Shown in pieces: positions 22,109 to 40,932 of a stretch of 64,000 bases of DNA (the stretch's first letter is position 1; every line of letters starts with the position of its first letter). Origin of the DNA: Salpingoeca rosetta (taxonomy: Eukaryota > Protista > Choanoflagellata). Under the pieces are notes generated by a model. That model had not been told where the DNA came from, did not search any database, and saw nothing but the letters and a program-made list of their open reading frames with translations. Made by a program: the position numbers and the translations under genes. Location: assembly GCA_033442325.1 (NCBI GenBank), contig JAWQFM010000017.1, positions 981,125-1,045,124 of the forward strand. The letters run 5' to 3'.

Positions 22109-23556
22109 TCAGTTGAGCAGGATTTGGGCCTGTGGGGTCATGGGCTCGGTGGTTGGCGTGTCCTGCGTGTGTGGGTTGTTGCGGTGGCAGTGGTCGCACC
22201 ACGCCCTGAGCCCGTTGTTGGAAATCTCCCGCTTCAACTGCCCAATGTTCGCCTTCCACGAACACCGCTCAGCCTGCACAGTGGTGGATTGGTAGCGCAA
22301 GAGTGAGGGAGAGTGCCTCTTTGATTGCCGGACGCAGCACCAGACAGACCGATAAAACTAGACAGAGACAGGCAGACACACACACACACAGACAGACAGA
22401 CAGACACACACACACACACAGAGACAGACAGACAGACACACACACACACAGAGACAGGCAGACACACACACATGCACACACACACACATGAATACACACC
22501 TCGAGCCTGCTCTTGGCCAAGCTGTTTTCGTTCTGATCACAGTCGCGCTTGTGCGCAGTCGCTTTCATGGGCTGCGCGTGGGTTGCGATTGGAAGCAGTT
22601 GGACGGGGCGAAGATGAGATGAAATCAACAGTTCTTCAATGTGCGTAGATGGACGTCGCCAAAACAAGTGCAGGCAAAACACGGACAGACCCAGCCCACA
22701 CCCACACACACTCGTTCGCACCAGGTAGGTTCGCGGTTCGCACAGGGACGGAAACTCGCTAAAGAACTTCTTGTATCCGCCCGCCATCACATACATCTTT
22801 CGGAGAAGGAAAAAAACAAAAAAAAAACAAAAACGGAGGTTGGGTGGTGGTGAGCTCGACAACAACAACAACAACCAACCAACCAACCAACCAACCAACC
22901 AACCAACCAACCAACCAACCAACCAACCAACCAACAACCAACCAACAACAACAAGAAGCTATGATTGATATCCAAACGCTCAATTTAAAGCAGTACGCTC
23001 ACACGTGTGTGTATGCAACGCACCTCGGGGTAGATGAGTTCTGGATGCTCGCGCGTCAGGTACAAGTCAACCTCGCTGTTGGCGCAAGGGCACACACACA
23101 CACACATAGTGAGAAAGGGGCGGGAACTATGCAGGTAAGTGATGACAGGCAAAGCAAGCAAGCACAGCAAGCAAGGAAGATCACAATGAAGCAGGTGAAG
23201 CAAGCACATCGACTCCACATGGCATCTCACCGCATAAACGCGTACTGGCCCGGGGCGCGGTGGGAGGAGAATTCGCAGTGGAAGATGATAGCGACATGCT
23301 CTGGGTCCTCCATCAGCACCGGGTTGCTGAAGAAGTTGCCGAGAATGTGCTCGCGCATCCACCAGTTGCGTGCCCCTGACACAAGAAGAGAGACAGAACA
23401 CAGAGAAAACGTAACAGAAAGGGAAGCGTCAAAGGTAGCACAGCGAGTGAGGGGTTAGGGAGACGGATACGATGAAAATGGTCAGAACACCCGTCGATCG
23501 ACACACACCCAAACACACCCAAACACACCCAAACACACCCACAGACACACAGACAG

Positions 23557-23588
<32 letters not shown>

Positions 23589-23791
23589 AGACACAGACAC
23601 ACAGACAGACACAGACACACACACACTCTATCTCCTGTCTTGTGCACGCACCGACAATGTGTCCGCCCCTGTGTTCAAAGGGGAAGCGGCAGTCGATGAT
23701 GAAGAAGTTCTTCAGGCCGTTTGGTCGCGCACCGCGCAGCAGAGACGCGACCGTCGCCGTCGACACACACCGGATGTTCGCATTCAGCCTG

Positions 23792-23830
<39 letters not shown>

Positions 23831-26492
23831 CCACAGGGACCGTATGATGAGAGCAATGAATGCGAGTGCCAGACTGCATTGGGAGATTCATGCAGGTACA
23901 CAAATCGGTAGACAATTGCATCATTTGACAACAAACGACTACAAACGACGACAAAGGACGACAAACGATTGTACATGAACCAACACGACTGCACGCAATT
24001 ACACCCACCCACCCACCCACCCACACACACACACACACACAAGGCGACTTACTTATGCGGTTCGTCGAGGGTGTCCAGCATGCACTTCTTGAGCAAATCA
24101 CCGCGCACGCTGAGGTCGTTGGGAAGAACAGGGGCCGCTGCGTTTGGGCCGTGCTGCTTGCACAGCTGGCGACGGTGCAGCATGTCGTGATCGTCAACAG
24201 CCCTGGGCGCACACAAGCAAACACAAGCAAGTGAGCGTCAAGTCAGGAAGATGGCGGGGAACCGACAAGAAAGCAGTGAGGGGGCGCAAAACTGGGAAAT
24301 GCCCAAAGCTCCGTGGGCCACCAACACGTCAAAAGCTCCGTGAACCACCAACACGTCAAAAGCTCCATGAACCACCAACACGTCAAAAGCTCCGTGGGCC
24401 ACCAACACGTCAAAAGCTCCGTGAACCACCAACACACATCCACCCCTACACCCACACCACAGCACTCACGATTGTGTGCTGATGTCGGGCATGGAGCGAG
24501 AGTTGCGCTGTCTAAAGTGCATGCGGGCAACGTGGGCCGGCGACAGCGCCGCCGCCACCCCCATCATCGCCGTTGTCGTGCTCGAAGACGCCGTGGCCAT
24601 CGTCGCCAGTGCAGTCGCTGTTGCTGTTGTTGTTGTTGGGTTGCTGGATGTGAATGCCGTGCTCATGACGTTTGTTGTTGCTGTCGCTGTCGCTGTTGCT
24701 GATGATAATGCACTTGTTGATGATTGCGCCATTCTTGTGGACGCAAAGTGACGCCGCGGCCTGCTCATGTCCGCATGAACGGTTGCGAATGACGCAATCG
24801 CCTCTGATGCATCAAAACCAACGTGCCAGCCAGCCCACCGTGCTTGCTCTCCATGTTGCTCTCCATGTTGTTGCTGTTGTTGTGGCTGGAACTGAGCATG
24901 GTGACGGTGACGAGGATCGACAGTACCACTCTCTGCATTAACATCATCATCACAACAACCACCACCCGCAACATTGCCAGTATCAGCGCCATCATCCGCC
25001 ATGCCGGCGCTGGCGTTGTTGCCCTGCGTGTTGTTGCCGTGTCCACGCATCACCCCGCGCATGATTGCACCACCACCCATCGCCCGCAGCATCGAGTTGG
25101 CCACGGCGTGCTCCGGCGCACAGATGGACGCGTGGCGGCACATCTGCTCGCGGTGCCTGCCAGCCCACACCCGGTGCTGCGGTGGTCGATGCTGCTGTGG
25201 TGCGAACGTGTCAGGGGCATCAAACAGCATGTCAAGCTCAGCCGTGTCGCCCTCATCAGCGAATGCCCGTGCGTCCACATCTCGCTCCTCCTCCTGCTCC
25301 TTCTCCTCACGACTCTCCGCCATCGCCTGTGCGCTCGTCACCTCCTCTCGTCTGCCGCGAACCACCTCCCCAGCCCCTTCCTGCTGTTGCGCATGAACAC
25401 CTTTACCGACACCACCGACACTGCCATCGCTAGTGCCACTGTTGCTGCTGCTGCTGCTGCTGTCATGGTTGCCGCTGTGGCGCAACACCTGTAGTGACGG
25501 CAGCATCCCGGGCCGCGTGACAGTAAAGGCGCCACTTCGTTGGCACGGACCAGACAGCGACCGGCTCCGTGTCAGTAGCGACGACGACAGTGGCGTTGAG
25601 GATGATGTCGGCGACGCTGCCGGCTCTTTCGCTGCTGCAACCGCCATCATCATCGCATGGCTGATGGAACTGGTGCTGTTGTCATGGCTTGTGGTGTGGA
25701 CATCGCTTGCGCCATCAGCCACACCGCAGCCCGGACTCTGTTCAATGGCAGCAGCCAGCGTGGGTGCAAACAGCGGCGGCGCTTTCCCGCGACACCGCCC
25801 ACGATCATCACCACCAACACCAACACCAACACCAACAGCACCTTTGCCGCTGCCGCCGTCCCGATGGCCGCTGCCTCTGTGTGCGGAGTTTGGTCCACCA
25901 AATCCAAGGAAGCTCGCGTTTGCACTCATGCACGACTCGTTCAGGCTCTGGTTCGTCACATCCAGATGCCCTTGGTGTTGCTGCTGGTGCTGCTGGCGCC
26001 CGTGGAGCCCAAACAAGTCTGGGGGCGTGGCCATGGAGGATGCGTGAGCAGCCACATCATCCCCACGCGACGCACCAGCGTCAGCACCAAGGACTTGCGC
26101 ACCCATGCTGCCAAAGCTGTGGTCTCCACACTGCTCCTCGTCGGCTTCGTCGACCGGTGACATGGGCGCAGTTGCAATGCCGCCGCCGCGGCGATCACCA
26201 TTGACACCACAATCCTCATGTGCAATGTCACCATCTCGGTGTTCCTGTTCCTCCTCGACAACAATGCCAACACCGCCCAACAACTCCCCTTGCGGATGTG
26301 CTGTTGCGGCTGCCGTGTCCTCATTTCGCTTTTCGCATTCTTCCTCTTCATCCTCATCCTCCTCACATGTGCGTGTGGGAATGGGTGAAGGGGAGCGCAC
26401 AAGCACGCACACCGCCTGCTCATCCACCTCTGCTGAACCGGCAGTGCTGTTGTTGCTGTTGATGTCGCAGCTGTTTCGGTCACTGCCCGCGG

Positions 26493-26526
<34 letters not shown>

Positions 26527-26551
26527 GGTGTTGTTGTTGTTGTTGTTGACG

Positions 26552-26604
<53 letters not shown>

Positions 26605-26976
26605 GGTGCCTTCCCCTGTTTCGCTGGTGTCATTGGTGGTGAGAGTGGAAGCATCCCGCGTGTCTGCGTGGTGTTCCTTGGTTGTCTGCAGGCGCTTCGG
26701 CCACACAAATGCCTTGAGCGACTGGGCAGAGGTCGGCGAAAACACAGACGTGGTGCTGGCGCTGTCGCTGGTGCTGCTGTCCTTTGTGTCTGCGTCCGAT
26801 GCGTGGGCGGTTGCGGGCGGCGTGAAGAGTGACGACGACGACGCGCGCGAAAACACGCCAGACGAAAACGAGGAGAAGGACGCAGACCGCTGAGGCGAGG
26901 AGCGAAACACGCCACGCCGCTGAAACAGCTCTGCCTTGCCGCTCTTCCTGCTGCTGCCACTGCTGCTGCTGCTGCC

Positions 26977-27031
<55 letters not shown>

Positions 27032-28458
27032 TTATTGGTGGTGGTGTTGTTATTGGTGGTGGTGTTGTTCTCGGCGTCGTTGATGGTGGTGCTACTGCTC
27101 GTTGGGGTCGACAAGGACGACAGCGAAGGCAGCGACGACGACAAGGAGGGCGGGCGATGGGACATGCGTGCGGGTGTGTTCCGATAATCGCATTTCTTCG
27201 ATGCCTTGAGTAGCGTCGTGTCATCCAGCTCATCCAGCCCGCTGTCGTTCGAGAGGGAGCCGTGGTGGCTCACAATCGCGCTGTCAGGCGAGCACACACC
27301 AACCTGCTGCTTGCCCACCTCTCGTTGCTGGAGTTGCTGCAGTTGCTCCAGTTGTCGACTACGCACGCCATCACGCACCACCTGTCGATATGAGCGCTGC
27401 ATCAGCAGCCCACGATCAAGCGTGGCTGATTTTCGCTTCTGCGATACGCTCCCGCGCCCACGGCTACCATTACCGCTACCACTGCGGCTGCGGCTGCGGC
27501 CTGGCTGCCCAAGACCGCCGCGCTTGCACTGGCCATCGTCCTCACGCGTGTAATCGTTTGCAATCACTGCCGTGCCTGCATGCATTTGGTGGTGTTCATC
27601 GGCGTCCAGCGCCGCCACGCCCATCTGTTGTTGCTGTTGTTGGTGGCGCTGGTACCGGGGACCGCTGTCGTTGTCTGTGTTGCGGCCCGCATCACCTTGG
27701 GTGATGTCATGGTTGCCTGCAGGCACAGGCGCCGCAAGGGCCGTGAGGCGACGGCGCACCTTACAGTTTTCGCTGCGTGAGCGACGCAGCTTGTGTGGCG
27801 GCCGACGTGTCATCCCCTGCTGGATCTCGCTTCCGCTGTACGCGCGTGCACGCTCACCCACACCACCATCAGCATCATCAGAGTGGCGACAGCAGCTTCC
27901 ACTGCGACTGCTGCCGGTGTCAGCGTTGTCGTTGTTACCATCGTTGCTGGCGGTGCGGGGTTGAAGGGCGCACATTGGTGCAGGGTGTGACAGGCACGGG
28001 CGCGCATCTGCAACAGGTGCCGCGGCGTTTCCATCTCGCTCGCCCTCCACGCCCGCGTCGTCAGTGGTGTGGTTGGCGGCTCTGCGCTGGGACTGGGCCG
28101 CTGTGGGCGCCGCCGTGCCCTGTGCAGCAGCAGGACGTGCGGGCATGCCACGTGGTGCATGCGTCACGACAGACGTGAGCGAAGACGACAACGACGACGA
28201 CACGGACAGCGACGACGCCGACGACGAAGAAAACGGCGCGTGGTGGTCAAACGTAAACGCGGGCTGCTGCGTGAGCTTCACTGGGGATGAGTGGGTGGTG
28301 GAGGACGGCTGGCTGTCGCCATCAAAGGTGAAGGCAACCGGCTGTTTCTGCAGCAGCGCGCCACACGACCGCGCGGAGAGCGGGGCAGATGATGTTGGCG
28401 TGGTGCACGTCGACGTCACGCCAGAGGAGGCGTTGGTGTTCACACCAAACCCCAAAGA

Positions 28459-28490
<32 letters not shown>

Positions 28491-30324
28491 ATGAAGATGA
28501 AGATGCATTCGTGCGTGCAACGTTGTTCAGCGACACGGACAGACGCGCACGTGTGCGCATGGACATAAACGCCGACGACGAAGACGACGAGGATGTGTGT
28601 GTGGTTGCCGCTGATGTCCCCGGTACAGCCGGCGACGACGCTGAAGACGAGAGCGCCGTGAACGAGGTGGGTGGCTCATGCATGGTCATACCACCACCAC
28701 CACCACCACCACTGTTGTTGCTGGTGGTGCCAGCAAGACTAGAGTGGGGGCGAGAGGGCGGGGCTGAGGGCGGACCGCTCTCAGGCAGCGAGGGCGAGAA
28801 GCGAAACACCCGCTGGCTGTGATGGTCGTACTGCGGCTGCGGGTGCTGGTGCTGGTGCTGGTGCTGGTTGTTGTGGTTGTGATCGTGGTTGTGAGCGCGG
28901 CGCGGTGATGGCGATGGGGTGTTCATGGCGAGCGTCTGCATCATGCTCACGGGCGTCATGGGCAAGCGCTGCTGCTGGCTGTGGCGCCGCCTGCTGTTTC
29001 TGCTGCTGCGGCCACTGATTGTGGGCTCAGGCATGCCGTCGTCATGACACGAGGCGGTTTCATGCCCACGCATCACCTCGCCACCCACACCCTCCGCACC
29101 GTCACGGCCGATGCTGATGCCGGTGTTGGTGTTGGTGTTGTTGCCCTGATCGGGGCGTTGATCCATGTCCTGTTCGTCGTGCCCACCCGTGTGCACAGTG
29201 TTGGCGGCGGTGTTGGCGTTGTCGATGGGGAGCGGAGAGGGGAGGGGAGCGGTGAAGGTGCCATCGCTCGCGGGAGAGAAGGTTGACACGTGGTCGTCTG
29301 ATTCACCGCCCCCGCCGCAAAGCATGTCGGACACGTCTTCGCTCACGAGGGTGAAGCGCGTAATCTCGTCGCTGATGCTCTCGCGCGCACTCGGCGCCGA
29401 TGACCGGATCTTGCCTGAAAACACGCGGCAAGGTGTTGGGCGTTGCGTGTTTGGCGGTGAACAAGGAATTGGGTGGCGAAGAGAAACAGAAGACTCGTAT
29501 GCGTGCACGCATGCACGCGACTTCATCAAGCAAAAGAGCGAGTGAGGGGGGGGGGGGGGCTATGCATGTGAATACACAAATGCACACAGACAGACAGACG
29601 TACGCACATGCACACACACATAGACAGACGCACACACACACACACACACACACACACCCTACCGACCGAGGACGTGGTCGGCCGGGTGGTGTGAGGGCAT
29701 GAGCGGAGAAGAGCGCGTGCGGGCGTTGAAGAAGCGGCGGTGCGTCTTTGGATACTTTCCACCGGTCGACGTGGGCGTCTTATTCAGCGGCTGCGTCCCC
29801 GCCACTGATGACGATGATGACAATCTGGGTTGTGCCGGCGTGGTTGGCGTGGTCGGTGCCGCGTGGCCAGAGGGCGGCGTGATTGTCGTTGAGCGTGGCA
29901 GCGAGAGTGGATGGTGTTGGTGTTGGTTATGAAACGGGGACGTGCATCCCTGCACATGGTCACCGGCAGACCTGCTGCCTCTCCTTTGTCGAATGGTAAG
30001 TGTTGGGGACGTGTTTACCGCACCGTCATCTTGGTGGGGTAGTTGGCGAGCGTGGTTGTTGTGCTTTGGGTCGAGGGCTGTTGTGCTGTTGGAGTTGTTG
30101 GTGGTGTCGGAGAAGGGCGTCCGTGAGGCCATGGTCCGCGTCGAAGGGGAGGAGCAGCGTTGTTTCCCCAATAGCTCCACCCGCTTTGCCTGGAGAAGCT
30201 GCTGTGGCGGCGGCGATGGTGGTGCTTGAGATAAGCGATGGCTTGAGCGGCGCAAGAGGCGGTGGCGAAGGTGCTTGCGGCGATGATGGTGTTGCCACTC
30301 CCGACACTCGTCCCTGCTGTTCAT
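22109..30324 (-). CDS. cdc25: Cdc25 (M-phase inducer) phosphatase with a giant disordered N-terminus; multi-exon
   Basis: Spliced catalytic domain GDLLKKCMLDTL...NIRCVSTATVASLL...IIDCRFPFEHRGGHIVGARN...IIFHCEFSSHRAP...LIYPEMYVMAGGYKKFF...CEPRTYLPM (CX5R motif at 23257-23280). It joins in frame to the 29414-24470 exon and a first exon ending at 29667. Start is 30324 or 30132. Confidence 0.88.
24305..24435. repeat. 27-bp intronic minisatellite, about 5 copies (aaaagctccgtgaaccaccaacacgtc)
   Basis: Head-to-tail units with 1-2 substitutions and no spacers, inside a Cdc25 intron. Confidence 0.9.
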
Positions 30325-31595: not shown

Positions 31596-31975
31596 ATGCT
31601 GTTCTCGTTCCACACGGCGTGGTTCTCTACCTCGTGTCCGGAGGCCATTGTCGAGCTGTGGAGTGCGTTCGGCCTGCGTTTGCTGCTGTTTTTTTCTTGT
31701 TTGCTTGCTTCTCGTGCGCTGCTTTGGCGATTCCGCGTTTGAGTCATGATCATTGTTCTTTTGGTGGCGAGCACAGTTTGGCGCGAAACAACTACGCCAC
31801 GCTGCAACTGCCCATCTCCACTGACACCACCCGTGACTGTTGTACGTACATCTGTTGGTCCTTTTGTGCGTGGGACAGAGAAGCACGATGGCGTCCTGGT
31901 GCCCGTGGACTGCGCCGACTTTGTCTTCAGTGATGATGCGGACCACGATGACACCGCGCCGTGAGTCGTCATTGT

Positions 31976-32018
<43 letters not shown>

Positions 32019-33027
32019 AAGTATGAGGGACGTTTTCTGTGCGTGTGTGCGTGCGTTTGGAGTTGCTTCCACACATACATCCACGCGTGTCAGGTACACG
32101 TGTGGGCTGCATTCATGACATGATGTGCAAGCTGGCTGCACATGCATGTGCTGCTTACATGAGGAAGGAACCCCCTCCCACCACCACCGCTCACAATTCA
32201 CAAATGCTGTTTGCGTGCTCATTCCCATAGGTTGTTTGAGACGGAGGATTACAAGACTGACCAGTTGACCGTTTTCCGGTCCTCGTGGGTGCGGCGTGCC
32301 GTCAATGCCGCCAGCAACGCGGACGCTTGCCAGCTACTGGACCAGTACGTCCTCACGCCGCCCCGATCCGATCACTCCACACCTCCTGAGGTACTGCGCG
32401 CATGCGTGCGCGTGTGTTTGTTTGTGCAGCGTGTATCCGTGTGCGTGTTTACATTTGTGTGCATGTGTGTGTATGTGTGTACATCTGTATGTCTGTGTGC
32501 ATCGCCTCCCCTCTTGTCTGTCTGTGTCTGTCTCTGTGCAGGTGTCGTCATGTACAACTGCGCGCGTATGCATCATCCATTGTTCGCTGGTTATTCACTG
32601 TGGGTGCGAATTTGTTTCCTTGTCCAACTTACGTGTATCCACCTGCACATGTTCTGTCTTGTTTTGCTTGCCTTGTCAGGTTGCGGCTGCTGCAAGGAGC
32701 AAAGCTGCGCGCGGCAAAACGCGCCAAACACAGCAAGCCCAGTCACAACAACAAACACAGCAACAAACACAGCAACAACCACAGCAACAGCAAGCACAGC
32801 AACAGCAAGCACAGCAACAGCAAGCACAGCAACAACAGCAGGGACAGGACTGGGCGGAGGCGCCGGCCACGTGGGCTGCGCTTGGACGGACGTGGAGCAC
32901 GCTGGACCACGATGTGAGCAGCTTTGAACACGTGCGACGCGTGCTCTCCGTCGATGCCAATACCATGATTGACGAGTTTACCCCTGGCAAGGCGCCCTGG
33001 CGCGTCGTCAAGGCTGGCCACGCATAG
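31596..33027 (+). CDS. TERB2: TERB2-like protein (telomere repeat-binding bouquet formation protein 2), about 218 aa, 4 exons plus a possible 24-nt micro-exon
   Basis: Exons 31596-31662, 31879-31960, 32231-32390 and 32680-33027 (GT-AG, phases consistent) give MLFSFHTAWFSTSCPEAIVELWKKHDGVLVPVDCADFVFSDDADHDDTAPLFETEDYKTDQLTVFRSSWVRRAVNA...LDQYVLTPP...IDEFTPGKAPWRV. This matches my recollection of the vertebrate TERB2 motif order (WF..S...W....G...ADFLFS.DA.HPDT...DY....TVF...L..PP; C-terminal DFIPG). Confidence 0.72.
31777..31788. promoter_or_regulatory. E2F site TTTGGCGCGAAA in TERB2-like intron 1
   Basis: Reverse complement is TTTCGCGCCAAA, the classic overlapping E2F site. A CHR-like TTTGAA lies at 31372-31377 in the Cdc25/TERB2 divergent promoter. 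Confidence 0.4.
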
Positions 33028-33510
33028 CACCACTTGTGTGTTTACATGTGCGTTCATGTGTGCGTTCATGTGTGTGCATGTGCGTTCATGTGTGTGTGTG
33101 TACGTGTGTGTACATGTGTATACGTGTGCGTACATGTGTGTGTGTGTGTGTTTTCGCAGGAGTGTAGCTGACTTCTTGCTGGCGACGGTTGCTTGCTTGC
33201 GTTGCTTTCTCCTTTTGTGCTTTGAATCTTTTAATACGTCGTTTAATTGTCAACTATATACACGCGAGCAACCACGCTTGCGCGGGAAGCAGCACGCACG
33301 CACAAGCCACCGACCGCAAGAGCCATCACAGCACGTACTGAAACAAGATCATGTCATCGTCGTGTTGCAACAAGAGCGAAAAAAATAATACCACTTTGCA
33401 TCCCATCCCATCCACACACGCCCACGTGGTGCCGCAGCAACATCACGTCAACATCAGTGATGTGATCCCACGCATGCTCTCGAGATCACACACACGCGCG
33501 CGTACATGTA

Positions 33511-35218: not shown

Positions 35219-35486
35219 CACCGTTGCGGCCTAGTCGAATATTCACTGGTGTCACAGTGAATTGTCCAAAATCGCACGCATTTTGCTGCTGTTTGTTGCC
35301 AACCGCACCAACAACTGCACCAACACCCTCGCACACCAACACCTTCTCATATCTACACCCTTCTTCTTCCAGCCTCATCAGCTCACAGCAGCAGCAGCAG
35401 CAGCAGCAGCGCACACACCCTCCTTGCTCGCCAGCTCCTTCTTGCCCTCTCCCTCCACCCCGCTCTCACGCACGCAGACGCATGTG

Positions 35487-38400
35487 ATGAGGTTGTTTCG
35501 AACGCGGATATCCCCGGGAGGGCAGGAAGAGCAGGAAGATGGGGCAGTGGCAGTGACAACACCGCGCATCGCTGGCGACGCAGACTGGGATGATGATGAG
35601 GATGGTGCCGGGAGCAATGGCGACGATGACGCCAGTACACAAGGGGGCCCACACATCCCTTTGAACAGCGGCACCATTGCGGGTGATGGCGACGGCCACG
35701 CCGACTCCATTCGCGCACTCGCCGTCAGCCGGTGGTGCGTGTTCACGGCCAGCGCAGACGGCACCATCAAGGCATGGAACCCAGAGACGCACCAGTGCGT
35801 CGGCACGCTTGTTGGGCACTCCGGTTGCGTGCGCGCCCTGGACGTGTCGGACGACGGCCGACGCCTCGTCTCAGGGTCCTTCGACAACACCGTCAAGATC
35901 TGGGGGCTCACGCCGTCCATCCTCTCCACCACCATGGCGCCCGTCACAGACCCCTGCGTCAGCGTCAGTGACGAAACCTTGGCCACCAGCAACAGCAACA
36001 GCAGCAACACCAACAACAACGATGCTCACCAGTCACAGGAACGCCGCTCCCAAGCACATTCACAGCAGCAGCAGCAGGAGCAGGGCTCAGCGACAGCTGG
36101 CCCCTCCTCGGCGACACCGGGCCCGCGACGACGAAAGCGACGGGGTCTCCCAACCCGGCTGCTGTCACGAGCGCGGCGAACGCGACAGACCGTCATCAGC
36201 GACCTCAAGGCAACCCTCACAGGCCACACGGGCAAGGTGTATGCTGTCACCATCTCCGAGGACGGCAACCATGTGGCCAGCGCAAGCAAGGACCGCACCA
36301 TCAAGCTGTGGAACATGAAGTACCACCACTGTGAAGCCACTTTGCAGGGCCACCGTGGCGGCGTGCGCTGCGTGCTGCTTCACGCCATCAAATCCACAGA
36401 CCACGACACCGACGAAAGTACCGAGCGTGGTGCCACTGGTATGCCCATGCACCCGGGCTTAAACGTGGCGGCGGCATCCACGGGCGCAACCCTTGATCCC
36501 ACAGCAGCGAAGCTGTTCTTCAACCAGTCCCTTGAGCAGAGCATGCTGCTGCGCAGTGGTGCTGGTGCCGGCACAAACAACACCAGCAACAGTGGATGTG
36601 ATGATGACGACGATGGCAATGGGAGCAGCAGCAGTGGCAGCAGTAGTGTTGACAGCGATGCGAGTGACGACGAAGAGGACACAGATGAGAATGACGACGA
36701 CGACGACTTGGAGGGTGCCGAGGCTGCTGGGGACGGTGAGCCTGGTATTGCAGAGGGTAATCACTTTATCTCCAGCAACAGCAACGTCAGCAACAGCAAC
36801 ACGACAAACAACGACACCAGCACAAGTAATCTGCTGCAGAATGCACAGCCGATGCCATCACGGCAGCATGAAGACGCAACTTCGACAAGGAACAAGAAGA
36901 AGAACAAGAACAAGAAGAAGAAGAAGAAGAAAAAGCGACGGAGGAGAAGTAGCAAGCTTGCACGCCACCACCGCAATACATCAGGCAACAATACAAGCGC
37001 AGCAACACCGACCACAGGAGCAGCAGCAGCAGCAACCGCGCGCGTGCAAGGTGGTGGGTTTTGCCTCCCTGGGGTGCTGATGGTGAGCGGCAGTGAGGAC
37101 TGCACCATCAAGCTGTGGGACCTCGGCAGCATGATGTGCGTGGGCACGCTCACAGGCCACAACAACTACATCAACACCGTGGCCATCACCCCACGCGGTG
37201 ACATCCTTGCCTCTGCCTCTGGCGACAAAACCATCCGCCTGTGGAGCGTGCCGGACCACCGCTGCCTCACCATCCTGACGGGACACACGGACTGGGTCAA
37301 CTCGCTTGCTATCACGCAGCAGGGGCGGTACCTCGTCTCGGGTGCGTGGAACGGCATCATCAAGATCTACATTCTCGAGACGCACGACTGCCTTGCCACC
37401 TTCCAGGCGCACGCGCGCAACGTGTCTGCGCTCAAGCTGGCGCCAGACGACTCGCACATTGTCTCTGCCAGCCGAGATCGCACCGCCAAGGTGTGGGACC
37501 TCAATCTTGACGAGCGCGTGTCTGTGTGGCACGGGCATGCCGCGTGTGCCAAGTGCGCCGTCGTCTCTGCGGACGGCACGCTCCTGTGCACGGGGGGTCA
37601 CGATGCGGTGATCAAGATCTGGGACACGGCCACTGGGGACTGCATTGCCACCATCGCTGCGCACAGCGACTACGTCAACGCGCTCGCCCTCACCCGCGGC
37701 GACATGCTGTTGGTCAGCGCGAGCGGTGACCGCACACTGCGCGTGTTCAACTTTGACACGCGTCGCTGCCTGCAGGTGCTCAAGGGGCACACGCACTTTG
37801 TTCGCGCGCTGGCCACGGCGCACAGCGGCCAGTGGGTTGTCTCCGGCAGCTGGGACCAGACGCTGCGCATGTGGGATCTGGACACGGGCAAGTGCCTTGC
37901 TGTTCTTGGCGGGCGTGAGGGCAAGGTGACCGCCGTCGCTGTCACACGCGACGACACCACCATCATCTCCGGCAGCAGCAACAACCACGTGCGGCTGTGG
38001 TCTGCGCAGAACCACGTGTGCCTTGCATCCCTCCCCGGTCACCACTCCCGCATCAACGCGCTCGCCGTCACCAACGACGGGCATGTCATATCCGGCAGTG
38101 GCGACTGCACGATACGCGTGTGGAATCTCACCACCCGCAAGTGCGCGGCTGTGTTACGCGGGCACACGGACTATGTCAACTGCCTGGTGCTGTCGCAGGA
38201 CGCTGACGGGCACACGCACCTCGTCTCGGGCTCCCACGATGGCTCGCTCATCATCTGGTCGCTCGAGACGCGCACGTGCGTGGCCGCGCTTGGCGGGCAC
38301 ACGGCGCCCGTCACCGCCGTTGTCGTCAGCAACGACGGGCGGTTTCTCTACTCCGGCAGCAAGGACATCTCTGTGCGCGTGTGGCCCGTGGCGTCGCTGC

Positions 38401-40932
38401 TTGCACCGCACAGCTTCTTTGGTCTGCCCCACTTCCCGACGTTTGCCATTGAGGGCACCATCCAGTATGACCGCTTTCACGCCGACGCCGCGCAGCGCAT
38501 GCGGGCGATTCGCACGGCCCTCCACCGCTTCCCGCTCACGCTCACCTTCCACATGCCCGACATGGCGCACACGCCGCTCGGGTGGGCGGCCGGCAGCAGC
38601 AGCCGCCTCGACATATTGCACGCGCTGTTCGCCACGCCAAACCTCCCGCTGTTTGACATTGGCGCGCGGCCGTCGCTGCTTCGCCAGGCAATCTTCGAGG
38701 CCAAGGACGAGGAGGTGGTGCGGGCTGTGACCACCAAGATTGTGCAGGCGGCGCGTGCGCAGGACGAAGGGGTGGAGCGACCGGAACTCCCGTCCGCTTG
38801 GCGCCTCTCCGTGAGCTCGCTGGACGAGTCGTTTACAGAGGACATCATCTCGTGCGTGGAGCAGTACCCGGGTGTCGCTGCCGACTTCCTGGACAATCTT
38901 GGCCTCGTTCGCGCCAACACGGACAGCGGGTTCTCGCAGCAGCACACGCGGCTGCCTGGTCCCGAGATGATTGTCGCCGGCCACCACCTGCCCCAGCAGC
39001 ACGACCTGTGGCACCGTCTCAAGCAGCGCGGTGTCATGCGCAAGCTGGAGAAGCCCTCCGCGCGCGCCGTTGTCACGGAGGCGCGGGTTGTGCCCGTGCC
39101 GTACGCTGGCGGCTTTCTTCCGGACGGCCGCAGCTTTCTCGATGCGCTCGTGGAGACGGGGCGAGCAGAGCTGTTCAACAACTACATTGCCCGTGCCATT
39201 GTCCGCTTCAAGTGGGAGTGTTACGGGCGTCGCACGTTCCAGCGCGGTGGGCTGTTCTATCTGCTGTCGCTGCTGCTGGTCACCACGTTTGCGTTCCTAA
39301 TTAACCTGGAGGGCAAGGCCGTGCACACGCTGCTGACGTCCAAGAGCGGGAGCGACGTTGCGTCTGTGGTGGTGCTGCTGTTCATGCTGGGTGTGTCCAC
39401 CGCCGAGCTCTCGCGCGAAGTGGAGCAGTGGAAAAGGCTTCCAGACCGCTTGCACGACTTTTGGAACTGGCTGGATGCGTGCAACATCATGTTGGTGTTT
39501 GTCGTTGGCATCACGTACATGAGCGGGTGGCAGCACACGCGCGCCCTGCTGGCCGTGTCCGTGTACTTGCGGTGGTTTGGATCCCTCTACTACATGCAGG
39601 CGTTCAAGGTTGGTGTGTGTGTGTGTGTGTGTGTGCGTGTGTGTGTGCACGTGTTTGTGTGTGTGTGTGTGTGCGTACGTGTGCGTGCGTGTGTGTGCGT
39701 GTGCGTGCGTGTGTGTGCGTGTTTGTGCGTGCGTGCGTGTGTGTGTGAATGTGAATGGGTGTGGATGATGATAGTTTGCCTCGCACAAGCGTATGGGGTG
39801 ATGATTGTGAGACACAAACGTTGACGTTGGGCGCATTGGTTTTATTGGTTGTCTGTGAACTCACATGGCACCTGCCCCACTTGCTTTGTATCCTTCTTCC
39901 CTTCTTGCTTTCATTCCTCCACCCCCCTCTCCCCAACAGCGAACCGGCCCGCTTGTCCGCATGGTGCTGGTCATCTGCTTTGACATGCGTTTCTTCCTCA
40001 TGCTGCTTGGCATCAGCATCATGGCTGCGTGGGTCGCCTTTCGCGTCCTGCTGATACAAGGCACCGCGGGTTACGATGAGGCGCTTGGCGACCCGGCCAA
40101 CGGTCTACTTGTCATGTTCAACATGCTGTTGCTGGTGGACTTTGACATTGCCACGCTTGGCGGCGAGTACGTCGTGCTTGTCCGCATCATCTTCCTCCTT
40201 TCCATGATCCTCGTGCCCGTTGTGCTGCTGAACCTGCTGATTGCGCTCATGTCGGACTCGTACGAGCGCATCCAGGACCGCGCAGACATTGAGTTCCAGC
40301 TGCTGCGCGCACGCATCTTGCGGGAGCAGGAGGCGTTCATGAGCGAGGCGAAGAAGAAAGACCCCCGCATCTTCCCCAAGTGGCTGCACGTGCTGGTGCC
40401 AAAGGGCGGCGGTGTTGGGCGCCCACCGGCAACGGAGCAGTGGCTCGGCGTCTTGCATGTGTTGCGATCGGGTATCGATGCGCTCTCGGCAAAGCTGGAC
40501 GGCGTGCAGCAGCAGATGAAGCAGAACGCAGCACAGAGATCAACAAGCATGAACTACCAGCCACAGCAGCAATCACAGCAGTCGCACAGCAGTGACAACT
40601 GTGATGGCGGTGGTGGCGGCGCTTGGGGTGGGCACGTGTCTGTGAGTGCTCCCGTGGACTTTTCGCATCGGGAGCGGACGTGGCTGGAACCATCGGCAAG
40701 AAGGGAAACAACAGACACCGCCATGGCCACGCTTGGCGTCGGGGACAGTAGCGGAAGACATGGTACTGCTGGCAGCAGTGATGATACGGGTGGTGGTGGC
40801 ACAAGAAGACAGCAGCAGCAGCAGCAGCAGGCGTTGGAAGATCGGATGGTGCGATTGGAGGCCAAATTAGATCGCCAGCATGAGCAGCTGCAGGCCATTC
40901 TCACGCAGCTCGCAGCCCGTCCACAGCAGTGA
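35487..40932 (+). CDS. TRP-family cation channel with a large N-terminal WD40 region, 2 exons
   Basis: More than 12 WD40 repeats (GH...SGS.D.TIKLWD), then pre-S1 [19 protein letters not shown]3 DFWNWLD, S4-S5 [14 protein letters not shown]|[10 protein letters not shown]6/TRP helix [32 protein letters not shown] and a C-terminal coiled coil. Intron 39609-39939. Confidence 0.9.

What the first reader, a model, noticed from the sequence alone, without database searches (positions are those of the whole stretch)
31596..33027. Hidden, apparently full-length TERB2 homolog: meiotic telomere-bouquet machinery outside animals?
Seen: four exons join with canonical splice sites into a ~218-aa protein that no single ORF in the track reveals. 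Known: vertebrate TERB2 (~220 aa) bridges TERB1 (via its N-terminal domain) and MAJIN (via a C-terminal motif) to tether meiotic telomeres to the nuclear envelope, and TERB1-TERB2-MAJIN is generally regarded as animal-specific. Inference: from memory of the human sequence, both the N-domain (AWFSTS...LW...G...ADFVFSDDADHDDT...DY...TVF...VLTPP) and the distal motif (IDEFTPG vs LHDFIPG) are conserved in order, separated by a Gln-rich linker. If the host is a choanoflagellate, the complex would predate animals.
Basis: partly seen in the sequence, partly recalled or inferred. Interest (0 to 1): 0.9.

Follow-up and report, generated by a model that had tools for sequence, protein, structure and literature searches.

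The report
Choanoflagellate copy of meiotic protein TERB2

Summary
Confirmed. Four GT-AG exons (31596-33027, +) give a 218-aa protein identical to the public model PTSG_06632 of Salpingoeca rosetta, so it is not hidden. It is a true TERB2. On its own it hits human TERB2 (PDB 6J07, E 1.2e-8), and an animal-only profile scores it 92 bits. Its fold matches TERB2 better than any generic BRCT domain. The residues that bind TERB1 (Y57) and MAJIN (E202, F203, P205, W210) are in register. Introns 1 and 2 sit at the same positions and phases as in sponge, placozoan, annelid and snail TERB2, which points to inheritance from the choanoflagellate-animal ancestor. Caveats: Pfam already labels the protein TERB2 and probably contains it, so Pfam scores are circular. 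The MAJIN-binding motif is weak taken alone. I found no other non-animal TERB2. Meiotic expression, partners and function are untested. This scan earlier noted TERB1-like and MAJIN-like genes on other pieces of this genome, and one of those reports already mentions this gene; I could not check them. Searchable papers still date the complex to the animal ancestor.

The parts
31596..31662 (+). Exon 1 (aa 1-23): start codon, first strand with the AWFS motif, helix ending in the conserved Trp22
   Evidence: aligns to TERB2 profile positions 1-20
31663..31878 (+). Intron 1, phase 1, directly after Trp22; same column and phase as in Corticium, Trichoplax, Owenia and Lymnaea TERB2
31777..31788 (.). 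Two-way E2F-type site TTTGGCGCGAAA inside intron 1, the only perfect copy in the 64-kb window; function untested
31879..31960 (+). Exon 2 (aa 23-50): conserved Gly27, the FVFSDD strand, and Asp47-Thr48
31961..32230 (+). Intron 2, phase 2, after DT-x; same column and phase in all five animal genes mapped
32231..32390 (+). Exon 3 (aa 50-103): Asp56-Tyr57 and Asp60 (human TERB1-contact residues D55, Y56, D59), the TVF strand, and the YxLxP motif at 89-93
32391..32679 (+).
32680..33027 (+). Exon 4 (aa 104-218): Ala/Gln-rich low-confidence linker (about aa 104-180), then the MAJIN-binding-type motif (F185; E202-F203-x-P205-G206; W210) and the stop codon

Best explanation
The gene is the S. rosetta orthologue of animal TERB2, inherited vertically from the last common ancestor of choanoflagellates and animals, and most likely still works as a two-ended adaptor. 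SHOWN here: an N-terminal BRCT-like domain (aa 1-96) of the TERB2 type, a disordered Gln-rich linker, and a C-terminal motif with the MAJIN-contact residues in register; two ancestral intron positions; a native position in the S. rosetta genome. INFERRED from the mammalian structures: the N-domain binds a helix-turn-helix of a TERB1-like protein that sits on telomeres, the C-terminal motif wraps around a MAJIN-like inner-nuclear-membrane protein, and the linker spans the two. In meiotic prophase this would tie chromosome ends to SUN-KASH complexes and help homologues pair. My odds: orthology about 0.97, vertical inheritance about 0.93, meiotic TERB1-MAJIN bridging about 0.7.
For: phmmer of the protein alone against the PDB gives one significant hit, human TERB2 6J07_A, E 1.2e-8. 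An animal-only N-domain profile scores it 92.4 bits. The N-domain finds 94 other proteins among 1.8 billion, and every one with a name is from an animal, many named TERB2. Structure: top hit 6J07 by Foldseek (E 8.7e-6, rmsd 1.8 A; next BRCT 1.8e-3) and by VIA-align (Z 13.3 against 10.0). The Atlas's own model gives TM 0.85 to TERB2 and at most 0.68 to other BRCT domains. Human Y56, whose mutation abolishes TERB1 binding, and F192, whose mutation abolishes MAJIN binding (PMC6361898), correspond to Y57 and F203. Human D191, F192, P194, Y199 (PMC6297230) correspond to E202, F203, P205, W210. The motif starts 17 residues from the end (animals 14-37), and 0 of 20,000 shuffles reach its score. Introns 1 and 2 match 4 of 5 and 5 of 5 animal genes; chance about 2e-4 before splice-site bias. 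Keeping both binding surfaces on a long branch implies both partners exist (inference). Earlier scan notes report TERB1-like and MAJIN-like genes in this genome (unchecked).
Against: No second non-animal TERB2 was found, although the protein collection includes EukProt. The C-terminal motif is weak by HMM (1-5 bits) and finds nothing in the PDB by itself. Human E58 is Thr here, and the basic DNA-binding tail (human 214-220) is missing, as in most invertebrates. The tree cannot place the sequence. Six probable RNA runs of laboratory material seem to hold the spliced transcript, which may mean expression outside meiosis. No junction, expression, partner or localisation data were obtained.
Confidence: 0.72

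Rival explanations
1. A true, vertically inherited TERB2 orthologue whose job is not (or not only) meiotic: a constitutive or cell-cycle-regulated telomere-to-envelope tether, like fission-yeast Bqt3/Bqt4 in vegetative cells, with meiotic restriction arising in animals.
For: Six probable RNA runs from two studies hold 0.46-0.47 of the stretch's words, close to the 0.39-0.54 expected for a spliced transcript and far from the 0.89-0.97 of DNA-like runs. The gene sits head-to-head with a Cdc25 cell-cycle phosphatase gene and has an E2F-type site.
Against: Culture conditions and levels are unknown, and deep libraries pick up leaky meiotic transcripts. TERB2 is germ-line or meiosis-linked in mouse, Hydra (PMC7227075) and sponges (PMC7743902). 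Earlier notes put E2F sites at several meiotic genes of this genome (unchecked).
Confidence: 0.2
2. The gene came into the Salpingoeca lineage by an old DNA-level transfer from an animal, so TERB2 remains an animal invention.
For: It is the only non-animal member found. Shared introns would survive a DNA transfer. The tree does not reject a position beside vertebrates or sponges, and the best tree puts it weakly beside gastropods (93/74).
Against: Long branch and at most 34% identity to any animal row; GC3 in the range of its neighbours; host-style repeat-rich introns. Reported transfers into S. rosetta are from bacteria, algae and fungi, though that screen did not test animal donors (PMC7971027). 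If the TERB1-like and MAJIN-like genes on other scaffolds are real, three separate transfers would be needed. Missed orthologues are expected for a short, fast-evolving, meiosis-linked gene.
Confidence: 0.05
3. A generic small BRCT protein that resembles TERB2 by fold only, or animal DNA contaminating the assembly.
For: The N-domain does have a BRCT fold. The Pfam score is probably circular.
Against: Sequence-level hit to TERB2 alone; shared introns; C-terminal motif in place. It is embedded in a 1.39-Mb S. rosetta scaffold and held by 20 sequencing runs of one organism from at least five studies.
Confidence: 0.01

Closest known systems
Animal TERB2 (Pfam PF15101; human TERB2 in PDB 6J07), middle subunit of the TERB1-TERB2-MAJIN complex
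   Same: Length (218 aa, as rodent TERB2); BRCT-like N-domain; Y56-, F192-, P194-equivalent residues; YxLxP motif; flexible linker; C-terminal motif; introns 1 and 2.
   Different: Host is unicellular. The linker is poly-Gln. The third intron differs and the intron before the C-motif, present in all five animal genes mapped, is missing. Human E58 is Thr. There is no basic tail. The head-to-head neighbour is Cdc25, not the MBD-domain gene seen in three animals. Partners and meiotic role are untested.
Generic BRCT domains (XRCC1, DNA ligase IV, TopBP1/Rad4, Rap1)
   Same: Same fold for aa 1-95 (Z 6-10).
   Different: Only 4-19% identity, lower scores than TERB2, no PDB sequence hit, and no TERB2-type C-terminal motif.
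Fission-yeast Bqt1-Bqt2 / Bqt3-Bqt4 and budding-yeast Ndj1 telomere adaptors
   Same: Analogous job: linking telomeres to SUN proteins in meiosis (PMC9140367).
   Different: No sequence similarity to TERB1/TERB2/MAJIN is reported (PMC7227075), and none turned up in my searches.

Membership tests
TERB2 | N-terminal TERB1-binding domain with family-level sequence similarity (independent of Pfam) | tested here: met
   E 1.2e-8 to human TERB2 in the PDB; 92.4 bits with a profile of 63 rows lacking this protein; E 3e-11 against a rodent TERB2
TERB2 | N-domain fold closer to TERB2 than to other BRCT domains | tested here: met
   my model used a TERB2 alignment, so partly circular; Atlas's own model, TM 0.85 against 0.68 or less
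TERB2 | TERB1-contact residues D55, Y56, E58, D59 | tested here: met
   D56, Y57, D60 kept; E58 is Thr59: three of four, including the essential Tyr
TERB2 | [F/Y]xLxP motif at the end of the N-domain | tested here: met
   Y89-V-L-T-P93
TERB2 | C-terminal MAJIN-binding motif (D191, F192, P194, Y199) near the C-terminus | tested here: met
   E202, F203, P205, W210 in exact register, 17 residues from the end, 0 of 20,000 shuffles; weak by HMM and phmmer alone
TERB2 | Unconserved flexible linker between the two ends | tested here: met
   pLDDT 45-60 over about aa 120-200
TERB2 | Basic C-terminal DNA-binding tail (human 214-220) | tested here: not met
   absent; also absent from most invertebrate members, so a vertebrate feature and not a family-defining one
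TERB2 | Ancestral intron positions | tested here: met
   two of three introns shared with sponge, placozoan, annelid and snail genes
TERB1-TERB2-MAJIN complex | TERB1 and MAJIN encoded in the same genome | not tested
TERB1-TERB2-MAJIN complex | Meiosis-specific expression | tested here: inconclusive
TERB1-TERB2-MAJIN complex | Physical binding to both partners and telomere-envelope localisation | not testable with these tools
   needs experiments or a multi-chain prediction

The most novel reading that the evidence does not exclude
The whole TERB1-TERB2-MAJIN tether is older even than choanoflagellates plus animals and goes back towards the animal-fungal ancestor, with diverged members hidden among small fungal BRCT proteins. 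The lead is an Atlas cluster of 52 Basidiomycota BRCT proteins of 260 aa at score 0.90, which I could not test. The milder reading, a complete complex already working in meiosis of the choanoflagellate-animal ancestor, I put at about 0.65-0.7.
Probability: 0.1. Interest if true: 0.8.

Novelty: new member of a known kind. Interest (0 to 1): 0.55.

Why it matters
The dedicated evolutionary study dates TERB1-TERB2-MAJIN to the ancestor of animals (PMC7227075), and a 2026 review still calls it conserved 'in most metazoan' (PMC13522668). A full-length TERB2 with shared introns in a choanoflagellate moves the origin of at least this subunit back one node. It suggests that the animal way of anchoring meiotic telomeres arose in a single-celled ancestor. 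It also offers a tractable test system: S. rosetta mating can be induced (PMC13366479) and, from my own knowledge, its genes can be edited, while its meiosis is barely described. The shift is modest, since meiosis itself is ancient and databases already carry the label.

Tried and rejected
(1) Pfam as proof: rejected as probably circular. The protein scores 230.6 bits over the whole profile, poly-Gln linker included, against 79-128 bits for invertebrate members and 92 bits on my animal-only profile. I infer it is in the Pfam seed; I could not see the seed. (2) Other non-animal TERB2: none found. The word-based searches returned only this protein and animal proteins, two metagenome scans were blank (one search failed), and all named hits of the HMMER search were animals. 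The unnamed top hit P0002 and P0015 group near sponges and have animal-type neighbours (DAXX, Bcl-2, T-box); P0070 groups with Hydra. These searches are insensitive for diverged, intron-split genes. (3) Trees: unresolved. (4) The C-terminal piece alone against the PDB: no hit. (6) Literature: no paper holds TERB2 with 'choanoflagellate' or the locus tag, the one TERB1 + choano paper concerns sponges, and the supplements checked were blank. Subscription papers are not covered. (7) E2F sites near animal TERB2 starts: none in five genes, so that site is not shown to be ancestral. I fetched no contig that I took for human; comparisons with mammalian TERB2 were at protein level only.

Full report
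OBSERVATION. Four exons on the + strand (31596-31662, 31879-31960, 32231-32390, 32680-33027) join through three GT-AG introns of 216, 270 and 289 nt (phases 1, 2, 0) into one 657-nt frame of 218 aa. No single ORF shows it. The product is identical to the NCBI model PTSG_06632 of the choanoflagellate Salpingoeca rosetta. That gene lies on supercontig GL832972.1 (1.39 Mb), which matches the window without a mismatch over 21,432 nt. The stretch is held by 20 runs of one organism from at least five studies. So the gene is real and native, and it was already annotated.

IDENTITY. Each exon, scanned alone, hits Pfam TERB2 (PF15101) at successive profile positions. I do not rely on this. The whole protein scores 230.6 bits including its poly-Gln linker, while sponge and annelid members score 79-128, which suggests this sequence is in Pfam's seed (inference). 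Independent tests agree all the same. The protein alone finds one significant PDB sequence, human TERB2 6J07_A, E 1.2e-8. A profile of 63 N-domains without it scores it 92.4 bits. Its N-domain finds 94 further proteins among 1.8 billion, and every one that carries a name is from an animal, from sponges and placozoans to vertebrates, many named TERB2. An AlphaFold2 model has pLDDT above 90 over aa 1-90 and a low-confidence linker. It matches 6J07 first by Foldseek (E 8.7e-6, rmsd 1.8 A; best generic BRCT 1.8e-3) and by VIA-align (Z 13.3 against 10.0). That model used a TERB2 alignment, but the Atlas's own model agrees: TM 0.85 to TERB2, at most 0.68 to other BRCT domains.

BINDING SURFACES. In human TERB2, Y56 is needed for TERB1 binding, F192 for MAJIN binding, and D55, E58, D59 form salt bridges to TERB1 (PMC6361898). 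D191, F192, P194 and Y199 form the MAJIN salt bridge and wedge (PMC6297230). Using a macaque orthologue for numbering, S. rosetta has D56, Y57, T59, D60 and E202, F203, P205, W210 in exact register. The [F/Y]xLxP motif found in all animal members is Y89-P93. The C-terminal motif is statistically weak alone: 1-5 bits by HMM and no PDB hit. But it starts 17 residues from the end (animals 14-37), and a matrix built from animal rows gives it 11.2 bits, reached by 0 of 20,000 shuffles. I chose the anchoring pattern knowing the query, so that figure is optimistic. The basic tail that binds DNA in human TERB2 is missing, as in most invertebrates.

GENE STRUCTURE. I mapped introns in five animal genes. 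Intron 1 (phase 1, after the conserved Trp) is at the same alignment column in Corticium, Trichoplax, Owenia and Lymnaea. Intron 2 (phase 2, after DT-x) is at the same column in those four and in Dendronephthya. Two matches of three has a chance of about 2e-4 before allowing for splice-site bias. Intron 3 is different, and the animal intron before the C-motif is absent. This is the strongest new evidence here: the gene shares descent with animal TERB2 at the DNA level, and it is not a look-alike BRCT protein or a retrocopy.

ORIGIN. Trees on about 100-140 columns do not place the sequence. It is a long branch with at most 34% identity to any row of the named-taxon tree, and no placement tested was rejected. 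Recent contamination is excluded; an old transfer from an animal is not formally excluded. Against transfer are host-like GC3, host-style introns, and earlier unchecked notes of TERB1-like and MAJIN-like genes on other pieces of this genome. I found no other non-animal member. That is a real gap, but expected for a short, fast-evolving gene poorly represented in vegetative transcriptomes. Vertical inheritance from the choanoflagellate-animal ancestor is the simplest reading.

EXPRESSION. Indirectly, six probable RNA runs from two studies hold 0.46-0.47 of the stretch's words, against 0.89-0.97 for DNA-like runs. A spliced transcript would give 0.39-0.54. This fits a spliced mRNA in laboratory material of unknown state and says nothing on level or timing. 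A perfect E2F-type site lies in intron 1, and the head-to-head neighbour is Cdc25. Both hint at cell-cycle-linked control and are untested.

MECHANISM. Most likely the protein is a two-ended adaptor as in mammals: the N-domain on a telomere-bound TERB1-like protein, the C-terminal motif around a membrane-anchored MAJIN-like protein, and a flexible linker between. In meiotic prophase this would couple telomeres to the LINC complex. The anatomy is shown; partners, localisation and timing are inferred (0.72). The main rival is the same orthologue acting outside meiosis (0.2). Old transfer from an animal (0.05) and artefact or generic BRCT (0.01) are unlikely.

WHAT IS KNOWN. Da Cruz et al. 2020 (PMC7227075) report homologues 'mainly in metazoans', date the complex to the animal ancestor, and never mention choanoflagellates in text or held supplement. 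Reviews repeat 'most metazoans'. No searchable paper joins TERB2 with choanoflagellates or names this locus; subscription papers are not covered. The protein is nonetheless already labelled TERB2 by Pfam, and an earlier report of this scan on the TERB1-like gene (s1-432391) already points to it.

VERDICT. A new member of a known family in an unexpected lineage: known to databases, apparently not to the literature. It moves the origin of TERB2 before animals and makes the meiotic telomere tether testable in a unicellular relative. Interest 0.55.

Noticed in passing
window 31777-31788: A perfect two-way E2F-type site (TTTGGCGCGAAA) lies in intron 1, 182 nt after the start codon; it is the only perfect copy in 64 kb (about 0.27 expected even with one mismatch). 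I looked for it after reading earlier notes on E2F sites at meiotic genes of this genome.
   Followed up: partly
window about 22109-30324, minus strand: The upstream head-to-head gene (2095-aa model with no precomputed Pfam hit) is a Cdc25 phosphatase: exon 23230-23379 hits CDC25A/C with E about 1e-5 and keeps the HCX5R loop. Its start lies 1.27 kb from the TERB2 start, so they may share a promoter.
   Followed up: partly
L004 1589-2900, L006 1356-2428, L007 1-2703: In a sponge (Corticium), an octocoral (Dendronephthya) and an annelid (Owenia), TERB2 is head-to-head with an MBD-domain (methyl-CpG-binding) gene: an old animal microsynteny not present in S. rosetta.
   Followed up: no
L002 10001-11473, L003 10001-10825: Two TERB2 genes from metagenome assemblies (probably sponge hosts) have no introns, and both are followed by an AMP-binding-enzyme gene; possible lineage-wide intron loss or retrocopy.
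   Followed up: partly
window 33036-33161: A TG-rich stretch just after the stop codon ends in a typical acceptor at 33160; possibly an intron in the 3' untranslated region or an alternative last exon.
   Followed up: no
window 35262-39824+: Large WD40-repeat protein with a C-terminal membrane region that looks like a TRP channel; from my own knowledge this resembles the choanoflagellate TRPW type. A TMEM107 gene lies between it and TERB2.
   Followed up: partly
ESM Atlas result for P0001: A cluster of 52 Basidiomycota 'BRCT domain-containing' proteins of 260 aa scores 0.90 by features (164 of 256 shared): a lead for fungal TERB2-like proteins, but near chance level and without sequences to test.
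   Followed up: no
P0070 (L009) and P0102: Hydra and a related environmental transcript have greatly lengthened TERB2 linkers (584 and 911 aa in total) yet keep both ends, showing that the linker length is free.
   Followed up: no
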